64,000 bases of DNA from IMGVR_UViG_3300018004_000004:151396-215395; one strand, 5' to 3'; counted from the stretch's first letter, positions 51,799-58,274 are shown. A program made the numbers and translations. Notes: a model not told the origin generated them from the letters alone.

Positions 51799-52710
51799 AA
51801 GGAGAGACTATGTCAGAAGAAGTCCATAAGCACTATCACAGTGATGGTATTGGGATAGGCACAATCATTGCAGGTATCCTGTCATGGTTGAAGTGGCACA
51901 GCATCGGCTGGCTCATTATCCATGCTTTGTTTGGGTGGTTGTATGTTATCTACTACCTGATCAAGTTCGGATTTCCGTATCAGTTGTTCCAATGAAGAAA
52001 GTCTTTAAGGTCCGCCTTGGTAATGACGGGGCGGAGAACTACCTCGAGAGACAGTACTTAAGAGGTCCGTGGGAGATAGGCGAGTGGGTCAAGGTAACGA
52101 TCCAATCTGTCCGCCGTAAGAAGGCAGTGTGTCGAAAGAAACCTGGAATCGTCCTTATCGGTTCATGAAGTGCGCAATGCTGCGCGCGGACTTTTATCGA
52201 TTGGATCCGAATATCTGGGGCCACCTGCGCTGCACCTGGAGGTTCTTTGATAAGTACGTCATGTTTCGAAGGATCGGCAGATGGATGCTCCCTTAGCTCC
52301 GATTAAGACCATATCCAGGTTCTACAAAGGACATTGGTTGAGGCTAGCTATTAGCTGGCGCTTCTGGGGTAAGTATGGCGGTAAGCGCATCGAAGCGCAA
52401 ATCAGGAAATGGAAAGAGGAAGCATTTGGATAAGCAACAAATCAACGTAGGTGTTGGCGGAGTTATGAGTGTGCCGGCACCAGCACCAGTTCTAATGGAA
52501 AGTTTCGAACAGCTCGAACAAGAGCTTTTGAATGGGCATTCGAACTTCATTATGTGCTATGAGGCACATAAGACGGATCCTGAGACTAAAATCCAGGAGA
52601 CGATCACGATCAAGAATGAGATGCCGATTCCCAATGATGAGCCTATGGCTTTCGCCCTTGTGGAGTTGGCAATGCGGAATCCTAGGGTTAGGATTCTGAA
52701 GGTTTGAGAG

Positions 52711-53353
52711 ATTGGTGGGCCGGACGGCCGCGGGCGCAAGCTCGAGGAAAATAGGGCCATCATAGAGCAAAGGAACCGATGAAAGTCGGGGGTCGAAAGG
52801 CTACGAGGTACGGGAGGTTACTAACCTAATCCCTTCCTGATGCAAACCCAAATAGGACGGTGAGACTGCTCGTCGTTGTAACCCGTCGGGTAGGGTGCAT
52901 TGGACAATCTAATGAATACGTACAAAACTCGGAAAGCGAGAAATCAGAAACGTTGGAGAAAGAGCCCAGCGGGCATTAAATACCTGAAGAGTAAGGCTTT
53001 CCGAGATAGTACGCGTGAGTCAAATAGGAAACGTGATAGGGAATATCGAGCTGAAATCCAGAGAAGGGTTAGAGCCGAGAAACTAAGGAGAGGTTGTAAG
53101 AGGTGTAAGTATCACAAACACTTCGCTGCCTTAGAGTTCCATCATCGGAATCCTAAGCTCAAAAAGTTTAGATTGTCCGAAAGCAGAAACTACTCTTGGC
53201 CTATGGTCCAGAAAGAAATGGCAAAGTGCGATGTTTTATGCGCTAACTGCCACGCCATTCTGGAGTTCAGAAAGCTACAGAGGAAAGCTTCTGCTTAGAC
53301 GGATGGCCGTCGCCTCGCAAGAGGCACAGGAGCCCTTTTATAGGCCCACCAGT
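52711..53353 (+). ncRNA. rnpB: Divergent minimal bacterial type-A-like RNase P RNA, interrupted at P18 by an HNH ORF
   Basis: P1 52711-21/53343-53; P2 gacggcc/ggccgtc; P3 with GCAA loop; GAGGAAAAU then P4 AAA-U-AGGGC/GCCCU-UUU; P5 catc/gatg; P6 gagc/gctc; P7 aggaa/ttcct; P8; P9 GAAA; P15 accc/gggt with AAAUAG/GGGUA loop; P16; UAGACGGAU J18/2; P19; ACAGGA. Confidence 0.9.
52912..53298 (+). CDS. HNH endonuclease embedded in the RNase P RNA gene
   Basis: Basic N-terminus; GCKRC...ALEFHHRNP...KCDVLCANCH. Confidence 0.9.
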   Translation: MNTYKTRKARNQKRWRKSPAGIKYLKSKAFRDSTRESNRKRDREYRAEIQRRVRAEKLRRGCKRCKYHKHFAALEFHHRNPKLKKFRLSESRNYSWPMVQKEMAKCDVLCANCHAILEFRKLQRKASA

Positions 53354-53368
53354 ACAGATCGGAGAACC

Positions 53369-53701
53369 GTGGCTAATCAACAGCCTAGATATGATCCTCC
53401 AGGAGGAGTAGAAGCTCTTCTGACTGCTCTTGAGAAGTCTCTTCGCAATGGCTATTATAGCGTTGAGGCAGAAGAGAAAGATCTGGTTGATGCGAAGAAA
53501 GATCTGGCTAATAAGAAAGCATCTTATGAGTATGCGCTGGCTTCTGTGGCAGAACATGAGATGAAGGTAAAGAAAGCTCGCCGTAAAGCAGCGGAGATTG
53601 TCAATGCTCTCGGCAAGCTGGATTGTCCTGAAGAAGTTATCAAGGCGTCGTGTAAGCCTTTGAATGCACATGACATTGCTGAATGGATTAGGGCCGAGTA
53701 G
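53369..53701 (+). CDS. Hypothetical coiled-coil protein; stop codon inside tRNA-Ile
   Basis: GGAG RBS with GTG at 53369. Confidence 0.65.
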   Translation: MANQQPRYDPPGGVEALLTALEKSLRNGYYSVEAEEKDLVDAKKDLANKKASYEYALASVAEHEMKVKKARRKAAEIVNALGKLDCPEEVIKASCKPLNAHDIAEWIRAE

Positions 53702-53767
53702 CTCAGTTGGTAGAGCAGGCGGTCGATAACCGCCAGGTCGTAGGTTCGAATCCTACCTCGACCACCA
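53692..53767 (+). tRNA. tRNA-Ile(GAU), atypical (C33, C3-A70 mismatch)
   Basis: GGCCGAG/CTCGACC, D arm GCTC/GAGC, GGCGG-TCGATAA-CCGCC, GTAGG-TTCGAAT-CCTAC, ACCA. Confidence 0.9.
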
Positions 53768-54139
53768 GTTTGAAAGGTGAGCATGAAACACATGGTTTGT
53801 AGTGTGGGTCCAAGACGTTACATCATCCGCGATGAAGCGGGTAACGTATTGAAGGATGAGCAGATAGAGTTGATTCAGTTCCGTGATGCTGATGGAAATA
53901 CAAAGTATATCAACCCTGTTCATTCACTCGCCTGGTCAAGTATGATGGATTTGTACAGAAAGGAGTCCTGATGTTAGGTAGGGACTATGCTGGAGAGATG
54001 GTGAGAACTCGACAAGCCAAATCAGCCATTCTGGCTGTTTTGGGCGTCTGGGTTGCCATCGTCTTAGGTAACATACTCTTTTGGGGCGGATTGATCTACG
54101 CTGCTGTTCACTTCGCTCGCAAATATTGGTAGTATCTAA

Positions 54140-54228
54140 GCGGGAATGGCGAAAATGGTAGCCGCGGAGGACTTAAAATCCTCTGGGTCTGATCCCCCGT
54201 GTAGGTTCGAGTCCTACTTCCCGCTCCA
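54140..54228 (+). tRNA. tRNA-Leu(UAA), long variable arm, U73
   Basis: GCGGGAA/TTCCCGC, GAGGA-CTTAAAA-TCCTC, TTCGAGT loop, TCCA end. Confidence 0.92.
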
Positions 54229-54254
54229 AAAACAAGGAGAGGATAAACAATCCC

Positions 54255-54842
54255 ATGTTGACTGTGTTCCTGGTGATTGCCGGAATCATTTTGCTTCTGG
54301 CAGTTCTTTCAGTTCTCGGCAGTTTGAACAAGTACCTCAGGGCTAAGACTGCGCTGGTCGAGGCTAAGACCGCGTTAGTCGAAGCCGAGACTGAGGATTT
54401 CCTGAATCAAGAACCTGAAGACGAAGACGAAGATCTGGACGAAGGTCCGGATTACAACCCATACGAAGAGGGGCTCGGCGAACGGACAACGATCGATCCG
54501 GCCATCCTTTTGAAGATGCTTGCCCTAGCGCGCGCACTGCGAGCACATCGACAAGCACAAGAACAAGTACAGACCGCTGATCAGACTGAACCAGCTCCCG
54601 ATCCGGAAACGGCAGAAGTGCCGGCCGGCGTGACAGCTGAAGCAGTCGGAATCACCGGAACAACTGGTCCCGTGGCAGATCCGGCAACGGATCCGACTCC
54701 GGACCCCACAATGACTGATCAGACAACGGCTCCGGCAACGGATGCGACGCAGACTGATCCAACGCCTGTTACCGTCCCTGACGCAACTGGCGATTCAACA
54801 GCAGTCGATCCGACAACCGAAACTGGATCTCCAGTCGGATGA
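54255..54842 (+). CDS. N-anchored membrane protein with acidic Pro/Thr/Asp low-complexity tail
   Basis: N-terminal TM; AKTALVE duplication; DPT/TD repeats. Confidence 0.7.
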   Translation: MLTVFLVIAGIILLLAVLSVLGSLNKYLRAKTALVEAKTALVEAETEDFLNQEPEDEDEDLDEGPDYNPYEEGLGERTTIDPAILLKMLALARALRAHRQAQEQVQTADQTEPAPDPETAEVPAGVTAEAVGITGTTGPVADPATDPTPDPTMTDQTTAPATDATQTDPTPVTVPDATGDSTAVDPTTETGSPVG

Positions 54843-54853
54843 GAAGAGGCTAA

Positions 54854-55126
54854 ATGCCTCCTGCAACGTTCATTATAGTAAGGAACGAAGCCGATCAGGC
54901 AGTTAGGACATACCGTAACCAGATGGTCTGGGGACAGTTCTTGTTTCGAGCTCTGCGGCGCGAGCTAAAGGGCAAATCAAAACAGGAAATCCTAACTGCC
55001 TGTGAGGCAGTTCGCGGGGAGATAGAACAGAGGTCTCTGCATATCCCCCACGATCGAATGATGCTCCTTAAGGAGCTTGGTAAGATTAGAGAAGAGTTTC
55101 TTGGGGCCACTAACTCAACTGGTTAG
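54854..55126 (+). CDS. Hypothetical protein; stop codon inside tRNA-Lys
   Basis: GAGG RBS, 90 aa. Confidence 0.6.
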   Translation: MPPATFIIVRNEADQAVRTYRNQMVWGQFLFRALRRELKGKSKQEILTACEAVRGEIEQRSLHIPHDRMMLLKELGKIREEFLGATNSTG

Positions 55127-55180
55127 AGTACCAGCCTCTTAAGCTGGGAGTTCAGGGTTCGAATCCCTGGTGGCCCACCA
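55104..55180 (+). tRNA. tRNA-Lys(CUU)
   Basis: GGGCCAC/GTGGCCC, CCAGC-CTCTTAA-GCTGG, TTCGAAT, ACCA. Confidence 0.95.
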
Positions 55181-55310
55181 ATATTGGAGGTAGTATGTCG
55201 CGACAAGGAAAACCCTGTATATTTCAGCGGTGGTGCTGGTATGATGGTTGGAGGCACTACTTCTTTGGCGCGATCTACTTTTGGAATGTGATTACGAAAG
55301 AAGGGGCCTA

Positions 55311-55646
55311 ATGAACGTTTGGGTTAGTCCCTGGCGGTGCGATCCTCCTCATAGGATTTCGCACCCCGAGAAGTTGGACGAGTTAACTCGTTTACTTGCC
55401 AAAGGATGGGGTAAAGGACATCCTGCATTAGTAGGTTATCCTTATGGCGAGCGGATTCAGCTCCTATCTGGGAGCCATCGAATCGTAGCTGCCCAACGCG
55501 CGCACTTGAAAGCCATTCCTCTAGTTCTTTGGTCCGCTGAGCAGGTTGAAGCTTGCTGGGGTGATCTCGATCTCTGGAAGCAAATCATGGACGCCCCACC
55601 GGTAAACGGATTGGAGTTCGGTTATGTCATTCAAAGAGTTCCATGA
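55311..55646 (+). CDS. ParB/sulfiredoxin-like domain protein
   Basis: L...GW...P.LV...LLSGSHRIVAAQRA.L..IP. Confidence 0.7.
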   Translation: MNVWVSPWRCDPPHRISHPEKLDELTRLLAKGWGKGHPALVGYPYGERIQLLSGSHRIVAAQRAHLKAIPLVLWSAEQVEACWGDLDLWKQIMDAPPVNGLEFGYVIQRVP

Positions 55647-55722
55647 GAAGTACCACGGCGCAATCATCTTGGTGATTGTAATGATCCTTGGTATAATCCT
55701 TATATGTACCGCGGGTAGGTAA

Positions 55723-56289
55723 ATGGACTGGTTTACAGCCGACCCACATTTGGGTCACTTCAACATCATCAAGTACTGCAATCGTCCTTTCAAGGACGTC
55801 GACCATATGGGGACGGTGATCATTGATAATATCAATGAACGTGTCGCGACGAACGATCGACTGTATATCCTGGGAGATATTGCGAATAAGGAAGTGTACG
55901 TCCAGGACTTCGTCAAAAGGGTCTCCTGTAAGAATCTTTTCGTTGTCCCTGGCAACCACGATAAAGAAAAGATCCTCCTTCGATACTTTAAGGTATTGCC
56001 TCAATGCTACTTGTATCGCGCCCCTGGAGAGGATTACAGGATAGTTCTATGCCACTATGCAATGCGCGTTTGGGAACATTCTCACCATGGCGCCGGCATG
56101 CTGTATGGTCATTCACACGGTGGACTTCCACCTGTTCCTGGAGCCCCCTCCTTCGATATCGGCGTGGACGCATGGGAATACAGGCCTCTGTCCTTAACCG
56201 AAGTCAAAGCCGAAATGAAGAGACTATGCGCTCTGGCGCTAGCCAATAGAGAGTTCATGCATCATGACGGTGAAGAAGAGGGCTCTTAG
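55723..56289 (+). CDS. Calcineurin-like metallophosphoesterase
   Basis: ADPHLGH, LGD, GNHD, CHY, YGHSH, DIGVD. Confidence 0.92.
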   Translation: MDWFTADPHLGHFNIIKYCNRPFKDVDHMGTVIIDNINERVATNDRLYILGDIANKEVYVQDFVKRVSCKNLFVVPGNHDKEKILLRYFKVLPQCYLYRAPGEDYRIVLCHYAMRVWEHSHHGAGMLYGHSHGGLPPVPGAPSFDIGVDAWEYRPLSLTEVKAEMKRLCALALANREFMHHDGEEEGS

Positions 56290-56357
56290 CTTAGATGGCC
56301 TAAAGCGCCGGCCTCATAAGCCGGGGATCCCTGGTTCGAATCCAGGAGAGCCCACCA
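56280..56357 (+). tRNA. tRNA with CAU anticodon (Ile2 more likely than elongator Met)
   Basis: GGGCTCT/AGAGCCC with C4-G69, CCGGC-CTCATAA-GCCGG, ACCA; paired 1-72 so not initiator. Confidence 0.9.
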
Positions 56358-56737
56358 AGAAAGGAAGTGCAATGTTCGCAGTCGTATTGTTTGAGTCACG
56401 AAATCAATGGGCCTCATTGGCCAGTCAGCCGGGAGGCACATGTGCTTTTCCGTTTGTGCCACCCTATGCTACACTTTATGATGGGTTTGGTAAACCCGAT
56501 CCAGGACTGAAGACTCTTGCAGAAGCAAAGGCAAGAGTCGAAGTTTGGGTAGATAAGAATAAGCCCACGCGATTTAAGGCTTACGTCATCGACCTGGAAA
56601 AGGACAAGATAGTCGCCACGACTGGCGAACTGAATGTCCCGTCACTGAAGTGGAAGGCTTTGAAGTAACGAGTTTAGGGGAAATATTACGCCCCTAATGT
56701 AGTGCCCCTCACCCTATCGGGTGGGACAGGAGGTAGT

Positions 56738-57136
56738 ATGTCGTTTGATTTGAACAAAGTGATGCTGATCGGTCGTGTTGGTCGCGATCCTGAGAGCAAA
56801 ACTGCAGGTAGCACAACTCTGTCTTCGTTCTCGGTTGCCACGTCGTACGGCACCGGTGACAAGCAGAAGACTGAATGGCATCAAGTTACCGCTTGGGAGA
56901 AGCTGGGTGAGTTTGCCCAGAACTATCTCCACAAGGGTGACAAGGTGTACGTCGAAGGCCGTATCTCCTACAACATCGTTGGAGAAGGTAAGGAAAAGAA
57001 GACGTACGCCCAAATCACGGCCACGAGCCTGATCAACCTGAGCCCAAAGCCGGCTGACGGCTCCACGGCTAACTCCAGCTCTGCTGCACCTGCGGCCCCG
57101 GCTGCTGCTGCAACGGACGAAGATATCCCGTTCTAA
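56738..57136 (+). CDS. ssb: Single-stranded DNA-binding protein
   Basis: LNKVMLIGRVGRDPE, TEWHQV.AW, KGDKVYVEGRI, C-terminal DEDIPF. Confidence 0.96.
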   Translation: MSFDLNKVMLIGRVGRDPESKTAGSTTLSSFSVATSYGTGDKQKTEWHQVTAWEKLGEFAQNYLHKGDKVYVEGRISYNIVGEGKEKKTYAQITATSLINLSPKPADGSTANSSSAAPAAPAAAATDEDIPF

Positions 57137-57162
57137 GGAACGAGACAACTTCAAAGAAGATT

Positions 57163-57191
57163 AGGGGGAAGAGGTCTTCCCCCTTTCTTTT
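57163..57191 (+). terminator. Rho-independent terminator
   Basis: agggggaaga/tcttccccct plus ttctttt. Confidence 0.75.
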
Positions 57192-57319
57192 AGAAAGGAA
57201 TGATGATGACACCTTTCATGTGTTTCCTGGTCGGTATAGTCGTTGGACTTCTGCTGGCCGCCGTCATTTGCATCATAGCTTTGTTCTTGATCGGAATCAC
57301 TTCGGATTAGGAGACCAGA

Positions 57320-58039
57320 ATGCCGAAACTGCTGGCGTGGAATCTTTCCCGCCTGAAAACGAAATCCCGCCCGTTGACCGGGCCACTTCCTGAGCTCTAT
57401 GTCAGGGAACTTACACGCATGGTGGAGGAGCTAAATGGCGTCTACCTTTCTGGGATACAAGTGGGGGATCCGCGGAGATTCGCTATCCCTAACCCTCGCT
57501 TCAAAGATTTCCCGATATTGTACAATCCTGAGATTATTGCACAGGACGACCCCATACGAGGAGAAGGTGAAGGGTGTCTTAGCTTTCCCGGCTTGTGGGT
57601 TCCGGTATCACGGTACACATACGTTACAGTGAGGTATCGAGATGGCCAATGGCAAGAGAGAACTGCCGTATTTGGTAATGAGGATCCCAATACTGAGGAA
57701 GCGCTCCTTGCTAAGGCTGTCCAGCACGAAGTAGCTCACATGGATGGCATTGTCCTCCATGATCGTATTGCGGACCCACAGAAGAGGATAAAGATCTATG
57801 CTCAGATTCTTCGGGAGTCCCTTGCCCAGAACAGATCTAGAGGGATACCTCAACTTTTGGAAGGCCCATCCGAAATGGATCCTCTTACTGTGTCGATCGT
57901 CGCGGTTTCTCCGGAGCCGGTACTCGGCGATCAAGAGCAAGCGAGTGTTGGAAATGATGAAACTGTTCATGAGCCCAATGTGAATGGAGATCAACCCAGT
58001 GAAGTGGAAAACACCGCCTCCGAAGCCAGTAACTCCTGA
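57320..58039 (+). CDS. def: Peptide deformylase
   Basis: GVYLSGIQVG (variant motif 1), EGCLSFPG, QHEVAHMDG. Confidence 0.9.
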   Translation: MPKLLAWNLSRLKTKSRPLTGPLPELYVRELTRMVEELNGVYLSGIQVGDPRRFAIPNPRFKDFPILYNPEIIAQDDPIRGEGEGCLSFPGLWVPVSRYTYVTVRYRDGQWQERTAVFGNEDPNTEEALLAKAVQHEVAHMDGIVLHDRIADPQKRIKIYAQILRESLAQNRSRGIPQLLEGPSEMDPLTVSIVAVSPEPVLGDQEQASVGNDETVHEPNVNGDQPSEVENTASEASNS

Positions 58040-58226
58040 GGGCGCTACTTACTACTGTAAGACATTCGCCTGGTTGCCTCATCAGGCTTCCGATGGATAT
58101 ACCTACTGGCTAGAGAGCGTCTACGTACAAATGAAGTTCATGCATGGCCGCGTCTCCGGCCGAAGGTATTGGTATATCGCAGAGTGGATAGGAAACAAGG
58201 CTCCTGAAGGCGAAGTGGATAGCTAA
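57984..58226 (+). CDS. Small hypothetical protein; stop codon inside tRNA-Cys
   Basis: FAWLP...G..YWLE.V pattern; start uncertain. Confidence 0.55.
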   Translation: MEINPVKWKTPPPKPVTPEGATYYCKTFAWLPHQASDGYTYWLESVYVQMKFMHGRVSGRRYWYIAEWIGNKAPEGEVDS

Positions 58227-58274
58227 CGGTCTGCAAAACCGTCGTAGCTGGTTCGAGTCCAGCCGGGAGCTCCA
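58200..58274 (+). tRNA. tRNA-Cys(GCA), atypical A8
   Basis: GCTCCTG/CGGGAGC, ACGGT-CTGCAAA-ACCGT, GCTGG-TTCGAGT-CCAGC, U73 CCA. Confidence 0.9.

What the first reader, a model, noticed from the sequence alone, without database searches (positions are those of the whole stretch)
53692..58274. Four of six tRNA genes contain the stop codon of the upstream protein gene
Seen: the ORF ending at 53701 and the phosphoesterase ending at 56289 both use tRNA positions U8-A9-G10 as their TAG (tRNA-Ile and tRNA-CAU, 10-nt overlaps). ORF 54854-55126 stops in the D arm of tRNA-Lys (23-nt overlap). The ORF ending at 58226 stops 27 nt inside tRNA-Cys. Established: RNase P cuts at the tRNA 5' end, and stop-less mRNAs trigger tmRNA tagging. 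Inference: tRNA maturation and upstream protein synthesis are mutually exclusive on one transcript. The phage's own RNase P could then act as a timer that releases tRNAs and silences these genes (tRNA punctuation as regulation). It could also be simple genome compaction.
Basis: partly seen in the sequence, partly recalled or inferred. Interest (0 to 1): 0.65.

Follow-up and report, generated by a model that had tools for sequence, protein, structure and literature searches.

The report
Gene stops inside phage tRNA genes
In this 215-kb peat-soil phage, four protein genes run into the tRNA gene that follows them and borrow their stop codon from it, but this is a common by-product of tight packing and gene-cassette turnover in phage tRNA regions rather than a conserved regulatory device.

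Summary
Four real protein genes end 10, 23, 10 and 27 nt inside tRNA-Ile, tRNA-Lys, tRNA-CAU and tRNA-Cys. Two of them use tRNA positions U8-A9-G10 as their TAG. Codon usage and dN/dS (0.06-0.33) show that the ORFs code for protein. The arrangement is not unusual, though. In 160 other phage loci, 27 of 59 ORF-to-tRNA junctions (46%) have the stop inside the tRNA, and 10 nt is the commonest overlap. Phage T5's annotation has four such cases. The idea that tRNA maturation removes the stop codon and lowers expression was already proposed for T4 segB and the T5 endonucleases. In four related phage lineages the overlaps come and go with small-ORF insertions, one deletion and tRNA replacement, and the ORF2/tRNA-Lys overlap exists only in this phage. 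The most likely explanation is compaction plus cassette turnover in a co-transcribed tRNA/ORF array. Competition between RNase P cleavage and translation termination is then a side effect, and it has not been measured. A reduced class-A RNase P RNA with an HNH endonuclease gene at the P18 position lies just upstream, shows compensatory base changes, and is covered by metatranscriptome contigs. The phage also encodes a tmRNA. Nothing supports a timer.

The parts
53369..53701 (+). ORF1, 110 aa, function unknown (GTG start; longer frames begin at ATG 53303 or 53231). Its last two codons and TAG lie in tRNA-Ile.
   Evidence: codon model; dN/dS 0.075 vs L085; homology starts at 53369
53692..53767 (+). 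tRNA-Ile(GAU) with encoded CCA. Positions 8-10 (TAG) are the stop codon of ORF1.
   Evidence: (67.1 bits)
54140..54228 (+). tRNA-Leu(UAA). No overlap: the upstream 53-aa ORF stops 8 nt before it.
54854..55126 (+). ORF2, 90 aa, function unknown. The conserved part ends at ..EFL, and the last 7 codons plus TAG are tRNA-Lys sequence.
   Evidence: (dN/dS 0.18)
55104..55180 (+). tRNA-Lys(CUU). The ORF2 stop lies in its D arm (23-nt overlap).
   Evidence: (68.4 bits)
55723..56289 (+). Calcineurin-like phosphoesterase, 188 aa. Its last two codons and TAG lie in tRNA-CAU.
   Evidence: phrog_547, 1.2e-41; dN/dS 0.06
56280..56357 (+). tRNA with anticodon CAU (called Met by ARAGORN; orthologues in L086, L181 and L182 have UAU, so possibly tRNA-Ile2). 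Positions 8-10 are the phosphoesterase stop.
   Evidence: (68.7 bits)
57984..58226 (+). ORF4, 80 aa (probably 75 aa from GTG 57999), function unknown. The last 8 codons plus TAA are tRNA-Cys sequence.
   Evidence: dN/dS 0.18-0.33
58200..58274 (+). tRNA-Cys(GCA). The ORF4 stop lies 27 nt inside it. The tRNA sequence printed for L085 and L168 is the same as the window's.
   Evidence: (47.8 bits)
52712..53351 (+). Reduced class-A RNase P RNA gene, directly upstream of ORF1, with an HNH gene at the P18 position.
   Evidence: RF00010, 53 bits, partial; uninterrupted homologue in L181, 95.3 bits, full length; compensatory pairs; RNA-library contigs
52912..53298 (+). HNH endonuclease ORF inside the RNase P RNA gene.
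   Evidence: (phrog_2255, 1.2e-23)
57163..57184 (+). The only strong intrinsic-terminator-like hairpin inside the tRNA/ORF array (after the SSB gene); another lies at 52170-52187, upstream of the array.

Best explanation
The five tRNA genes at 53.7-58.3 kb sit inside a densely packed, same-strand array of small protein genes, and they most likely have to be cut out of polycistronic transcripts. There is essentially no spacer on either side of a tRNA. The next gene's ribosome-binding site and start follow the CCA end within about 14-26 nt. Where the upstream gene has no stop codon of its own, translation runs into the tRNA and ends at the first in-frame stop. Every tRNA offers one early: U8-A9-G10 reads TAG in one frame, and the D arm supplies stops in the others. 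The overlaps are therefore scars of compaction and of cassette-like insertion, deletion and replacement at tRNA borders, a region also visited by HNH homing endonucleases. They are not devices kept by selection. As an inferred side effect, each transcript copy can give either a properly terminated protein (if translated before processing) or a mature tRNA plus a stop-less upstream mRNA. Host ribosome-rescue pathways or the phage's own tmRNA would handle that fragment. This may dampen expression of the four genes, but no timing is involved.
For: What is shown:
- The overlaps and the coding status of the ORFs.
- Tight packing on both sides of the tRNAs.
- Promoter-like sites at or below chance (6 found against 7.1 expected) and one strong terminator-like hairpin inside the array.
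- The same arrangement in 46% of ORF-to-tRNA junctions in unrelated phage loci. Stops run from about 10 nt before the tRNA to 27 nt inside it, and 10 nt is the modal overlap.
- After removing duplicates and relatives, about 7 of 22 independent overlaps are of the 10-nt class. That is the one-in-three expected for a random frame (my count).
- T5's annotation has overlaps of 6, 23, 14 and 24 nt.

Turnover in relatives:
- The ORF2 tail after ..EFL differs in every lineage, and only the window lacks the 57-65-aa ORF in front of tRNA-Lys, which points to a deletion.
- L085 and L179 carry a 48-53-aa CxxC ORF between ORF1 and tRNA-Ile. In L085 it is flanked by a 14-15-nt duplication of the ORF1-end/tRNA-5' junction.
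- In L181/L182 and L165/L166 tRNA-Cys has been replaced, and a relic of the old tRNA 5' part is kept as the ORF4 tail.
- The L086 phosphoesterase has its own TAA before the tRNA.
- L182 shows a tRNA acceptor-stem change rewriting the ORF1 tail (..KAE to ..KVE).
- HNH cassettes hit the RNase P RNA gene and, in L085, tRNA-Leu.
Against: There is no direct RNA-end or protein data for this uncultured phage. Co-transcription is inferred from packing and from a weak sigma-70 scan that does not cover phage-specific promoters. Two overlaps are old: ORF1/tRNA-Ile is shared by the window and lineage 4, and ORF4/tRNA-Cys is shared by three contigs whose ORF4 proteins are only 62-64% identical to the window's. 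Some selective value therefore cannot be excluded, although tRNA constraint alone would keep a stop that lies inside a tRNA. A phage that carries both an RNase P RNA and a tmRNA is at least compatible with an adaptive circuit.
Confidence: 0.7

Rival explanations
1. Constitutive down-regulation. The overlap is kept because tRNA 5' maturation by RNase P removes the stop codon, limiting how much protein each transcript yields and sending surplus product to tmRNA tagging. This is what was proposed for T4 segB and the T5 tRNA-region endonucleases.
For: The cleavage site lies upstream of the stop in all four cases. The published proposal covers the same logic (PMC2330249). ORF1/tRNA-Ile and ORF4/tRNA-Cys overlaps persist across diverged lineages. 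The phage encodes a tmRNA.
Against: Orthologues lose the overlap without any visible compensation. A stop inside a tRNA is held in place by tRNA constraint anyway, so persistence alone is not evidence for selection. The 10-nt class occurs at the one-in-three frequency expected for a random frame. The four proteins share no function that would call for low expression.
Confidence: 0.18
2. The phage's own RNase P RNA accumulates during infection and switches the locus from making protein to making tRNA.
For: A structurally conserved phage RNase P RNA lies next to the tRNAs and is covered by contigs from three metatranscriptome libraries.
Against: It lies on the same strand directly upstream of its supposed targets, with no promoter or terminator signal between them, so it is probably made together with them. 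Host RNase P is present from the start of infection. No RNase P protein gene was found in the phage. Relatives that carry the same RNase P RNA have fewer overlaps. Whether the RNA is catalytic is untested, and its specificity domain is strongly reduced.
Confidence: 0.07
3. Annotation artefact. The ORFs are not genes, or the tRNA 5' ends are miscalled.
For: Three of the four ORFs have no family assignment in Pfam, and only one has a marginal PHROG hit.
Against: The codon model supports the annotated frames and dN/dS is 0.06-0.33. Homologues occur in several lineages. Two independent tRNA finders agree on all 5' ends.
Confidence: 0.03

Closest known systems
Phage T5 tRNA gene region (NC_005859, about 28-41 kb)
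   Same: tRNA genes are interspersed with small ORFs and HNH endonuclease genes on one strand. Four annotated CDSs end inside the downstream tRNA: T5.057/tRNA-Met 6 nt, hegD/tRNA-Gln2 23 nt, hegC/tRNA-Ser2 14 nt and T5.069/tRNA-Asn 24 nt (three re-found).
   Different: T5 has annotated promoters within its tRNA region. No RNase P RNA or tmRNA appears among the features annotated in the stretch fetched. No sequence similarity was found beyond the tRNAs themselves.
Phage T4 segB / tRNA-Arg (Brok-Volchanskaya et al. 2008, PMC2330249)
   Same: A protein gene lies inside a tRNA cluster on one primary transcript. The authors proposed that cleavage between the last sense codon and the stop codon during tRNA maturation impairs the mRNA, and said the same was proposed for the T5 endonucleases.
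   Different: In the RefSeq annotation the segB CDS ends 5 nt before tRNA-Arg rather than inside it. The proposal was not tested there either.
Mitochondrial tRNA punctuation (Ojala, Montoya and Attardi 1981; from my own knowledge)
   Same: tRNAs excised from polycistronic transcripts define the mRNA ends, and protein genes abut or overlap the tRNAs.
   Different: In animal mitochondria, truncated stops (T or TA) are completed by polyadenylation after cleavage, so processing creates the stop. Here processing would remove it, and no such repair is known in bacteria.
Bacterial class-A RNase P RNA (Rfam RF00010) and reduced forms
   Same: The uninterrupted homologue in L181 aligns over the full model (positions 1-367, 95.3 bits). 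P1-P5, P15 and the conserved core strands are present, and the paired regions show compensatory changes.
   Different: About 95 model positions of the specificity domain are replaced by about 20 nt. P18 is absent in L181, or holds a 148-nt insert (L179) or an HNH gene (window, L085). Scores stay below the curated cut-off of 100 bits. The gene lies in a phage, and no partner protein gene was found there.

Membership tests
tRNA (Rfam RF00005 / ARAGORN cloverleaf) | Cloverleaf scoring above the curated cut-off, with the 5' end defined by acceptor-stem pairing | tested here: met
   All six tRNAs score 47.8-68.7 bits against a cut-off of 29. ARAGORN gives identical 5' ends.
CDS-into-tRNA overlap of phage tRNA regions (T5 type) | A real same-strand protein gene whose stop codon lies within the 5' part of the next tRNA gene | tested here: met
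   Four cases of 10, 23, 10 and 27 nt. Coding status is supported.
CDS-into-tRNA overlap of phage tRNA regions (T5 type) | tRNAs interspersed with small ORFs and free-standing homing endonuclease genes | tested here: met
   An HNH ORF lies at 52912-53298. Relative L085 has a second HNH cassette in tRNA-Leu.
tRNA-punctuated polycistronic transcript | ORFs and tRNAs lie on one primary transcript and are separated by RNase P / 3' processing | not testable with these tools
   There is only indirect support: no spacers, no excess of promoter-like sites, and one strong terminator-like hairpin inside the array. The metatranscriptome data are contigs, which cannot show RNA ends.
Regulatory stop-codon removal by tRNA maturation (T4 segB proposal) | The overlap is conserved among relatives beyond what tRNA constraint explains | tested here: not met
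   Every one of the four overlaps is absent in at least one related lineage, and the ORF2/tRNA-Lys overlap is unique to the window.
Regulatory stop-codon removal by tRNA maturation (T4 segB proposal) | Processing measurably lowers upstream protein output or yields tmRNA-tagged product | not testable with these tools
   This needs expression experiments.
Bacterial RNase P RNA class A (RF00010) | Score above the curated cut-off of 100 bits | tested here: not met
   The window scores 53.2 bits as a partial match, because the HNH insert splits it. L181 scores 95.3 and L179 scores 90.9, both over the full model length.
Bacterial RNase P RNA class A (RF00010) | Catalytic-core helices P1-P4 formed by long-range pairing and supported by covariation | tested here: met
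   P1, P2 and P4 pair across the HNH insert. There are six compensatory double changes between the window and L085 (P1, P5, a P7-like helix three times, and the hairpin before the 3' core strand), plus two more in a third variant.
Bacterial RNase P RNA class A (RF00010) | Cleaves pre-tRNA | not testable with these tools
   This needs an in vitro assay.
tmRNA (RF00023) | Score above the cut-off, plus a tag reading frame | tested here: met
   Genome 73138-73483 scores 150 bits against a cut-off of 47. The tag is AEFEELPLAA.

The most novel reading that the evidence does not exclude
This phage lineage runs a self-contained processing-and-rescue circuit. Its own miniature RNase P RNA is made from the same array and releases the phage tRNAs. 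In doing so it deliberately converts the upstream small-protein mRNAs into stop-less messages. Their products are tagged and ribosomes recycled with the help of the phage's own tmRNA. The balance between protein and tRNA output is thus set by the phage rather than by the host.
Probability: 0.1. Interest if true: 0.65.

Novelty: new member of a known kind. Interest (0 to 1): 0.3.

Why it matters
For the finding as given, the main value is a caution. A stop codon inside the next tRNA, very often the U8-A9-G10 triplet, is a routine feature of phage tRNA/ORF arrays and should not be read as regulation without expression data. The comparison also gives a clear small-scale picture of how such arrays evolve. 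ORF-sized cassettes are inserted or deleted exactly at tRNA borders. tRNAs are swapped while a relic of the old 5' end survives as a protein tail. Changes in a tRNA acceptor stem rewrite the last residues of the neighbouring protein. The idea of competition between tRNA maturation and translation termination, raised in 2008 for T4 and T5, remains untested, and this locus would be a compact system for testing it. The more surprising object lies just outside the finding's coordinates: a conserved and apparently expressed phage RNase P RNA that tolerates a homing endonuclease gene in place of helix P18.

Tried and rejected
- **Close relatives in the phage collection:** blastn of the region matched only tRNAs.
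- **IMG/VR scans with ORF1, ORF2 and ORF4:** these returned only a contig with 100% identical protein matches. The phosphoesterase scan gave 80 loci, but none below 100% identity had a tRNA directly after the gene.
- **Exact 16-nt RNase P core motif in IMG/VR:** besides that same contig, four hits turned up, and none of them gave an RNase P match in Rfam, so I treat them as chance.
- **Group I intron for the HNH insert:** Rfam found no other family in 52300-53400 at E up to 0.1. The insert is filled almost entirely by the ORF, and relatives show it sits where P18 would be. I rejected an intron in favour of a peripheral insertion.
- **My first placement of the insert boundary:** I put it at an ATGAAT motif, following the partial Rfam alignment. 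That was wrong, and the L181 alignment corrected it.
- **RNA ends from metatranscriptomes:** the runs are held only as contigs, and the short tRNA-sized matches come from other organisms, so nothing can be said about processing at the tRNA 5' ends.
- **Literature:** I found no paper describing a phage-encoded RNase P RNA (the huge-phage survey PMC7162821 does not mention RNase P). This is a limited library and does not prove novelty.
- **T4 RefSeq annotation:** segB ends 5 nt before tRNA-Arg, so T4 is a precedent for the idea rather than for a literal overlap.
- **Not used:** the large representative protein search, structure prediction and complex prediction. None would bear on the question.


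Full report
**Context.** The window is the last 64 kb of a 215,395-bp virus record that CheckV rates as complete. The genome has 31 tRNA genes. Twenty-five of them, plus a tmRNA, lie in a cluster at genome 63.6-73.5 kb, and six lie in the window. The same DNA occurs in many peat, wetland and soil metagenomes.

**The observation.** ARAGORN and Rfam agree on the 5' ends of all six tRNAs in the window.

| Upstream gene | tRNA | Overlap | Stop codon |
|---|---|---|---|
| ORF1, ends 53701 | tRNA-Ile, starts 53692 | 10 nt | TAG = U8-A9-G10 |
| ORF2, 54854-55126 | tRNA-Lys, starts 55104 | 23 nt | TAG in the D arm |
| Phosphoesterase, 55723-56289 | tRNA-CAU, starts 56280 | 10 nt | TAG = U8-A9-G10 |
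| ORF4, ends 58226 | tRNA-Cys, starts 58200 | 27 nt | TAA |

The other two tRNAs, His and Leu, follow ORFs that stop 7-8 nt before them.

**The ORFs are genes.**
- A codon model trained on the genome's 76 longest ORFs prefers the annotated frame of each by 12.6-55 log-likelihood units over the five other frames.
- Against relatives, dN/dS is 0.075 (ORF1), 0.18 (ORF2), 0.06 (phosphoesterase) and 0.18-0.33 (ORF4).
- The phosphoesterase matches phrog_547 at 1e-41. The other three have no informative family.
- ORF1 most likely starts at GTG 53369, behind a GGAG motif. Homology to relatives begins exactly there, and the longer frames would overlap the RNase P RNA.
- ORF4 probably starts at GTG 57999, where relatives have their start codon.

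**Packing.** Downstream of each tRNA, the next gene's ribosome-binding site and start codon follow the encoded CCA within about 14-26 nt. Sigma-70-like promoter matches are at or below chance (6 found, 7.1 expected). The only strong terminator-like hairpin inside the array is at 57163-57184, after the SSB gene; another at 52170-52187 lies upstream of the array. This points to polycistronic transcription, but it is weak evidence because phage-specific promoters are not modelled.

**Is it unusual? No.** They are phosphoesterase-bearing phage contigs from IMG/VR and metagenomes, plus T5.
- They hold 131 tRNAs. Of these, 59 have a same-strand ORF of at least 60 aa ending between 60 nt before and 75 nt after the tRNA start.
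- In 27 of the 59 (46%) the stop lies inside the tRNA. Twelve of those overlaps are exactly 10 nt.
- After removing duplicates and relatives of the window, about 7 of 22 independent overlaps are in the 10-nt class. That is the one-in-three expected if the entering frame is random.
- Non-overlapping junctions mostly have gaps of 0-9 nt. Stop positions therefore form a continuum around the tRNA start, which is what compaction predicts.
- T5's curated annotation has four CDSs ending 6, 23, 14 and 24 nt inside the next tRNA, two of them HNH endonucleases.

**Has the interpretation been proposed before? Yes.** Brok-Volchanskaya et al. [quoted passage not shown] They noted that the same was proposed for the T5 endonucleases in its tRNA cluster. 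In the T4 RefSeq record, segB ends 5 nt before tRNA-Arg.

**Relatives.** A metagenome scan and word searches gave four related lineages:
- L085 (phosphoesterase 91% identical)
- L179/L180 with L165-L167
- L181-L183, and L168
- L086 (phosphoesterase 78% identical)

Junction by junction:
- **ORF1/tRNA-Ile.** The 10-nt overlap is present in the window and in L181-L183. In L085 and L179 a 48-53-aa CxxC ORF sits between them, and its TAG shares one base with tRNA G1. In L085 the insertion is flanked by a 14-15-nt direct repeat of the ORF1-end/tRNA-5' junction (L085 2630-2644 and 2786-2799). The overlap was therefore ancestral, and the insertion duplicated its target. In L182 an acceptor-stem change (C3 to T) turns the ORF1 tail from ..KAE into ..KVE.
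- **ORF2/tRNA-Lys.** The overlap exists only in the window. All relatives have a 57-65-aa ORF that ends 6 nt before the tRNA. After the conserved ..EFL, each lineage has a different ORF2 tail, which suggests ORF2 has no stop of its own and ends in whatever lies downstream. The window state looks like a deletion of exactly that ORF.
- **Phosphoesterase/tRNA-CAU.** The overlap is kept in L085 and L167. In L086 the protein has its own TAA, 6 nt (ARAGORN start) to 15 nt (by eye) before the tRNA, whose anticodon there is UAU. In L181/L182 the tRNA is not next to the phosphoesterase.
- **ORF4/tRNA-Cys.** The overlap is kept in L085 and L168. In L181/L182 ORF4 ends ..APEGEENS immediately before a different tRNA-Cys. 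In L165/L166 there is a degenerate relic, a 5'-half tRNA-Cys pseudogene, an 85-aa ORF with a 1-nt overlap, and a new tRNA-Cys.

So every overlap is absent in at least one lineage. Where an overlap persists, constraint on the tRNA itself is enough to keep the stop.

**Mechanism.** What is shown: the anatomy, and its gain and loss among relatives. What is inferred from established knowledge: RNase P cuts at tRNA +1, and stop-less mRNAs recruit tmRNA-SmpB. On any one transcript copy, maturation of the tRNA 5' end and normal termination of the upstream ORF therefore exclude each other. A ribosome terminating at tRNA positions 8-27 must also unfold the acceptor and D arms. I consider this a tolerated side effect of packing (0.7). 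It could be a constitutive damper as proposed for segB (0.18). A timer is unlikely (0.07).

**The phage's own RNase P.**
- *Presence.* RF00010 matches window 52730-52917 at 53 bits, below the cut-off of 100.
- *Long-range pairing.* By eye, and then by pair counting, the 5' part pairs across the HNH ORF (52912-53298; phrog_2255, 1e-23) with a 3' part at 53299-53351. Together they form P1, P2 and P4.
- *Relatives.* L181 has an uninterrupted 259-nt version that aligns over the full model at 95.3 bits and lacks P18. L179 has a 148-nt insert at that site. The HNH gene therefore occupies the P18 position, a peripheral site.
- *Covariation.* Between the window and L085 the RNA parts differ at 18 positions, 14 of them in helices. 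They include six compensatory double changes, one of them in P1 across the insert. A third variant adds two more.
- *The insert is young.* The 387-nt HNH ORF differs at only 2 positions, as expected for a recently spread mobile gene.
- *Expression.* Contigs from three metatranscriptome libraries cover 52711-53351 at 95-97% identity. The rest of the 5.6-kb stretch is almost uncovered, and that serves as an internal control against DNA carry-over.
- *Partner proteins.* The phage has no RnpA or SmpB gene, so it would depend on host proteins.
- *Other phages.* One of five other huge phage contigs tested, a 463-kb record, carries a full-length RNase P RNA at 208 bits. Phage RNase P RNAs are therefore not confined to this lineage.
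- *Bearing on the timer.* The RNA lies on the same strand directly upstream of the tRNAs, with no promoter or terminator signal between them, so it is probably made together with them. Host RNase P is present throughout infection.

**Verdict.** It is a new example of a known and common arrangement. The regulatory interpretation is old, untested and not supported by conservation. The neighbouring RNase P RNA deserves a finding of its own.

Noticed in passing
window 52712-53351 (+); L085 1447-2086; L181 2969-3227; L179 2986-3390: Phage-encoded, reduced class-A RNase P RNA, conserved in four lineages directly upstream of ORF1/tRNA-Ile. The specificity domain is cut down to about 20 nt. P18 is absent (L181), holds a 148-nt insert (L179), or holds an HNH endonuclease gene (window, L085). 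There are eight compensatory base-pair changes among three variants. I found no paper describing a phage RNase P RNA in the searchable library.
   Followed up: partly
window 52912-53298 versus 52712-52911 and 53299-53351: The HNH ORF differs from L085 at 2 of 387 positions, while the surrounding RNase P RNA differs at 18 of about 254. This is the signature of a recently spread homing endonuclease gene.
   Followed up: partly
window 52711-53351, RNA runs X18 and X20: The RNA-library contigs of the RNase P RNA close on themselves. In X18 the 676-nt contig joins 53351 to 52711 through 5 extra letters, with a 30-nt overlap between its ends. In X20 a 279-nt contig with a 30-nt end repeat holds 52712-52893 plus 67 unmatched letters, which may be an insert-less form. 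This could reflect a circular RNA, a tandem copy, or template switching at a GATTGG microhomology. It remains unexplained.
   Followed up: no
L085 3056-3676 (homologue of window tRNA-Leu 54140-54228): In the relative, the resident tRNA-Leu(UAA) is split by a roughly 560-nt cassette. The cassette carries a complete, different tRNA-Leu(UAA) and an HNH endonuclease on the minus strand (phrog_10822, 9e-35). It looks like a homing cassette that brings its own replacement tRNA. RNA-library contig X18 record 12 spans the same insertion.
   Followed up: partly
L165 1400-2009; L181 8706-9009: tRNA-Cys has been replaced by a different tRNA-Cys in two lineages. The first 20-odd nt of the old tRNA survive as the coding tail of ORF4, and in L165 a 5'-half tRNA-Cys pseudogene remains at about 1609-1655.
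   Followed up: partly
L085 2630-2644 and 2786-2799: A 14-15-nt direct repeat (GATTAGGGCTGAGTA / GATTAGGCCGAGTA) flanks an inserted 48-aa CxxC ORF. The insert carries no stop of its own and borrows GAT-TAG from the duplicated target.
   Followed up: partly
genome C1:73138-73483 (outside the window): Phage tmRNA (RF00023, 150 bits) with tag AEFEELPLAA. No SmpB gene was found in the phage.
   Followed up: partly
window 56280-56357; L086 364-441; L181 7194-7269: The CAU tRNA that ARAGORN calls Met has orthologues with anticodon UAU (Ile) in three relatives. It may therefore be a tRNA-Ile2 read through lysidine rather than a Met tRNA.
   Followed up: no
window 53694 and 53761: tRNA-Ile has a C3-A70 mismatch in its acceptor stem, seen in the window and in L085. 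In L182 position 3 is T, which would restore pairing and at the same time changes the penultimate residue of ORF1.
   Followed up: no
L184 = IMGVR_UViG_3300033405_000001, 305811-306131: An unrelated 463-kb phage contig carries a full-length RNase P RNA (208 bits, above the cut-off). Four other huge phage contigs tested have none.
   Followed up: no
window 57320-58039 and 56702-57136: A peptide deformylase with an extension of about 84 aa beyond the C-terminal end of the domain, and an SSB gene, sit between the tRNAs. Together with the RNase P RNA and the tRNAs, the region looks like a translation and RNA-processing island.
   Followed up: no
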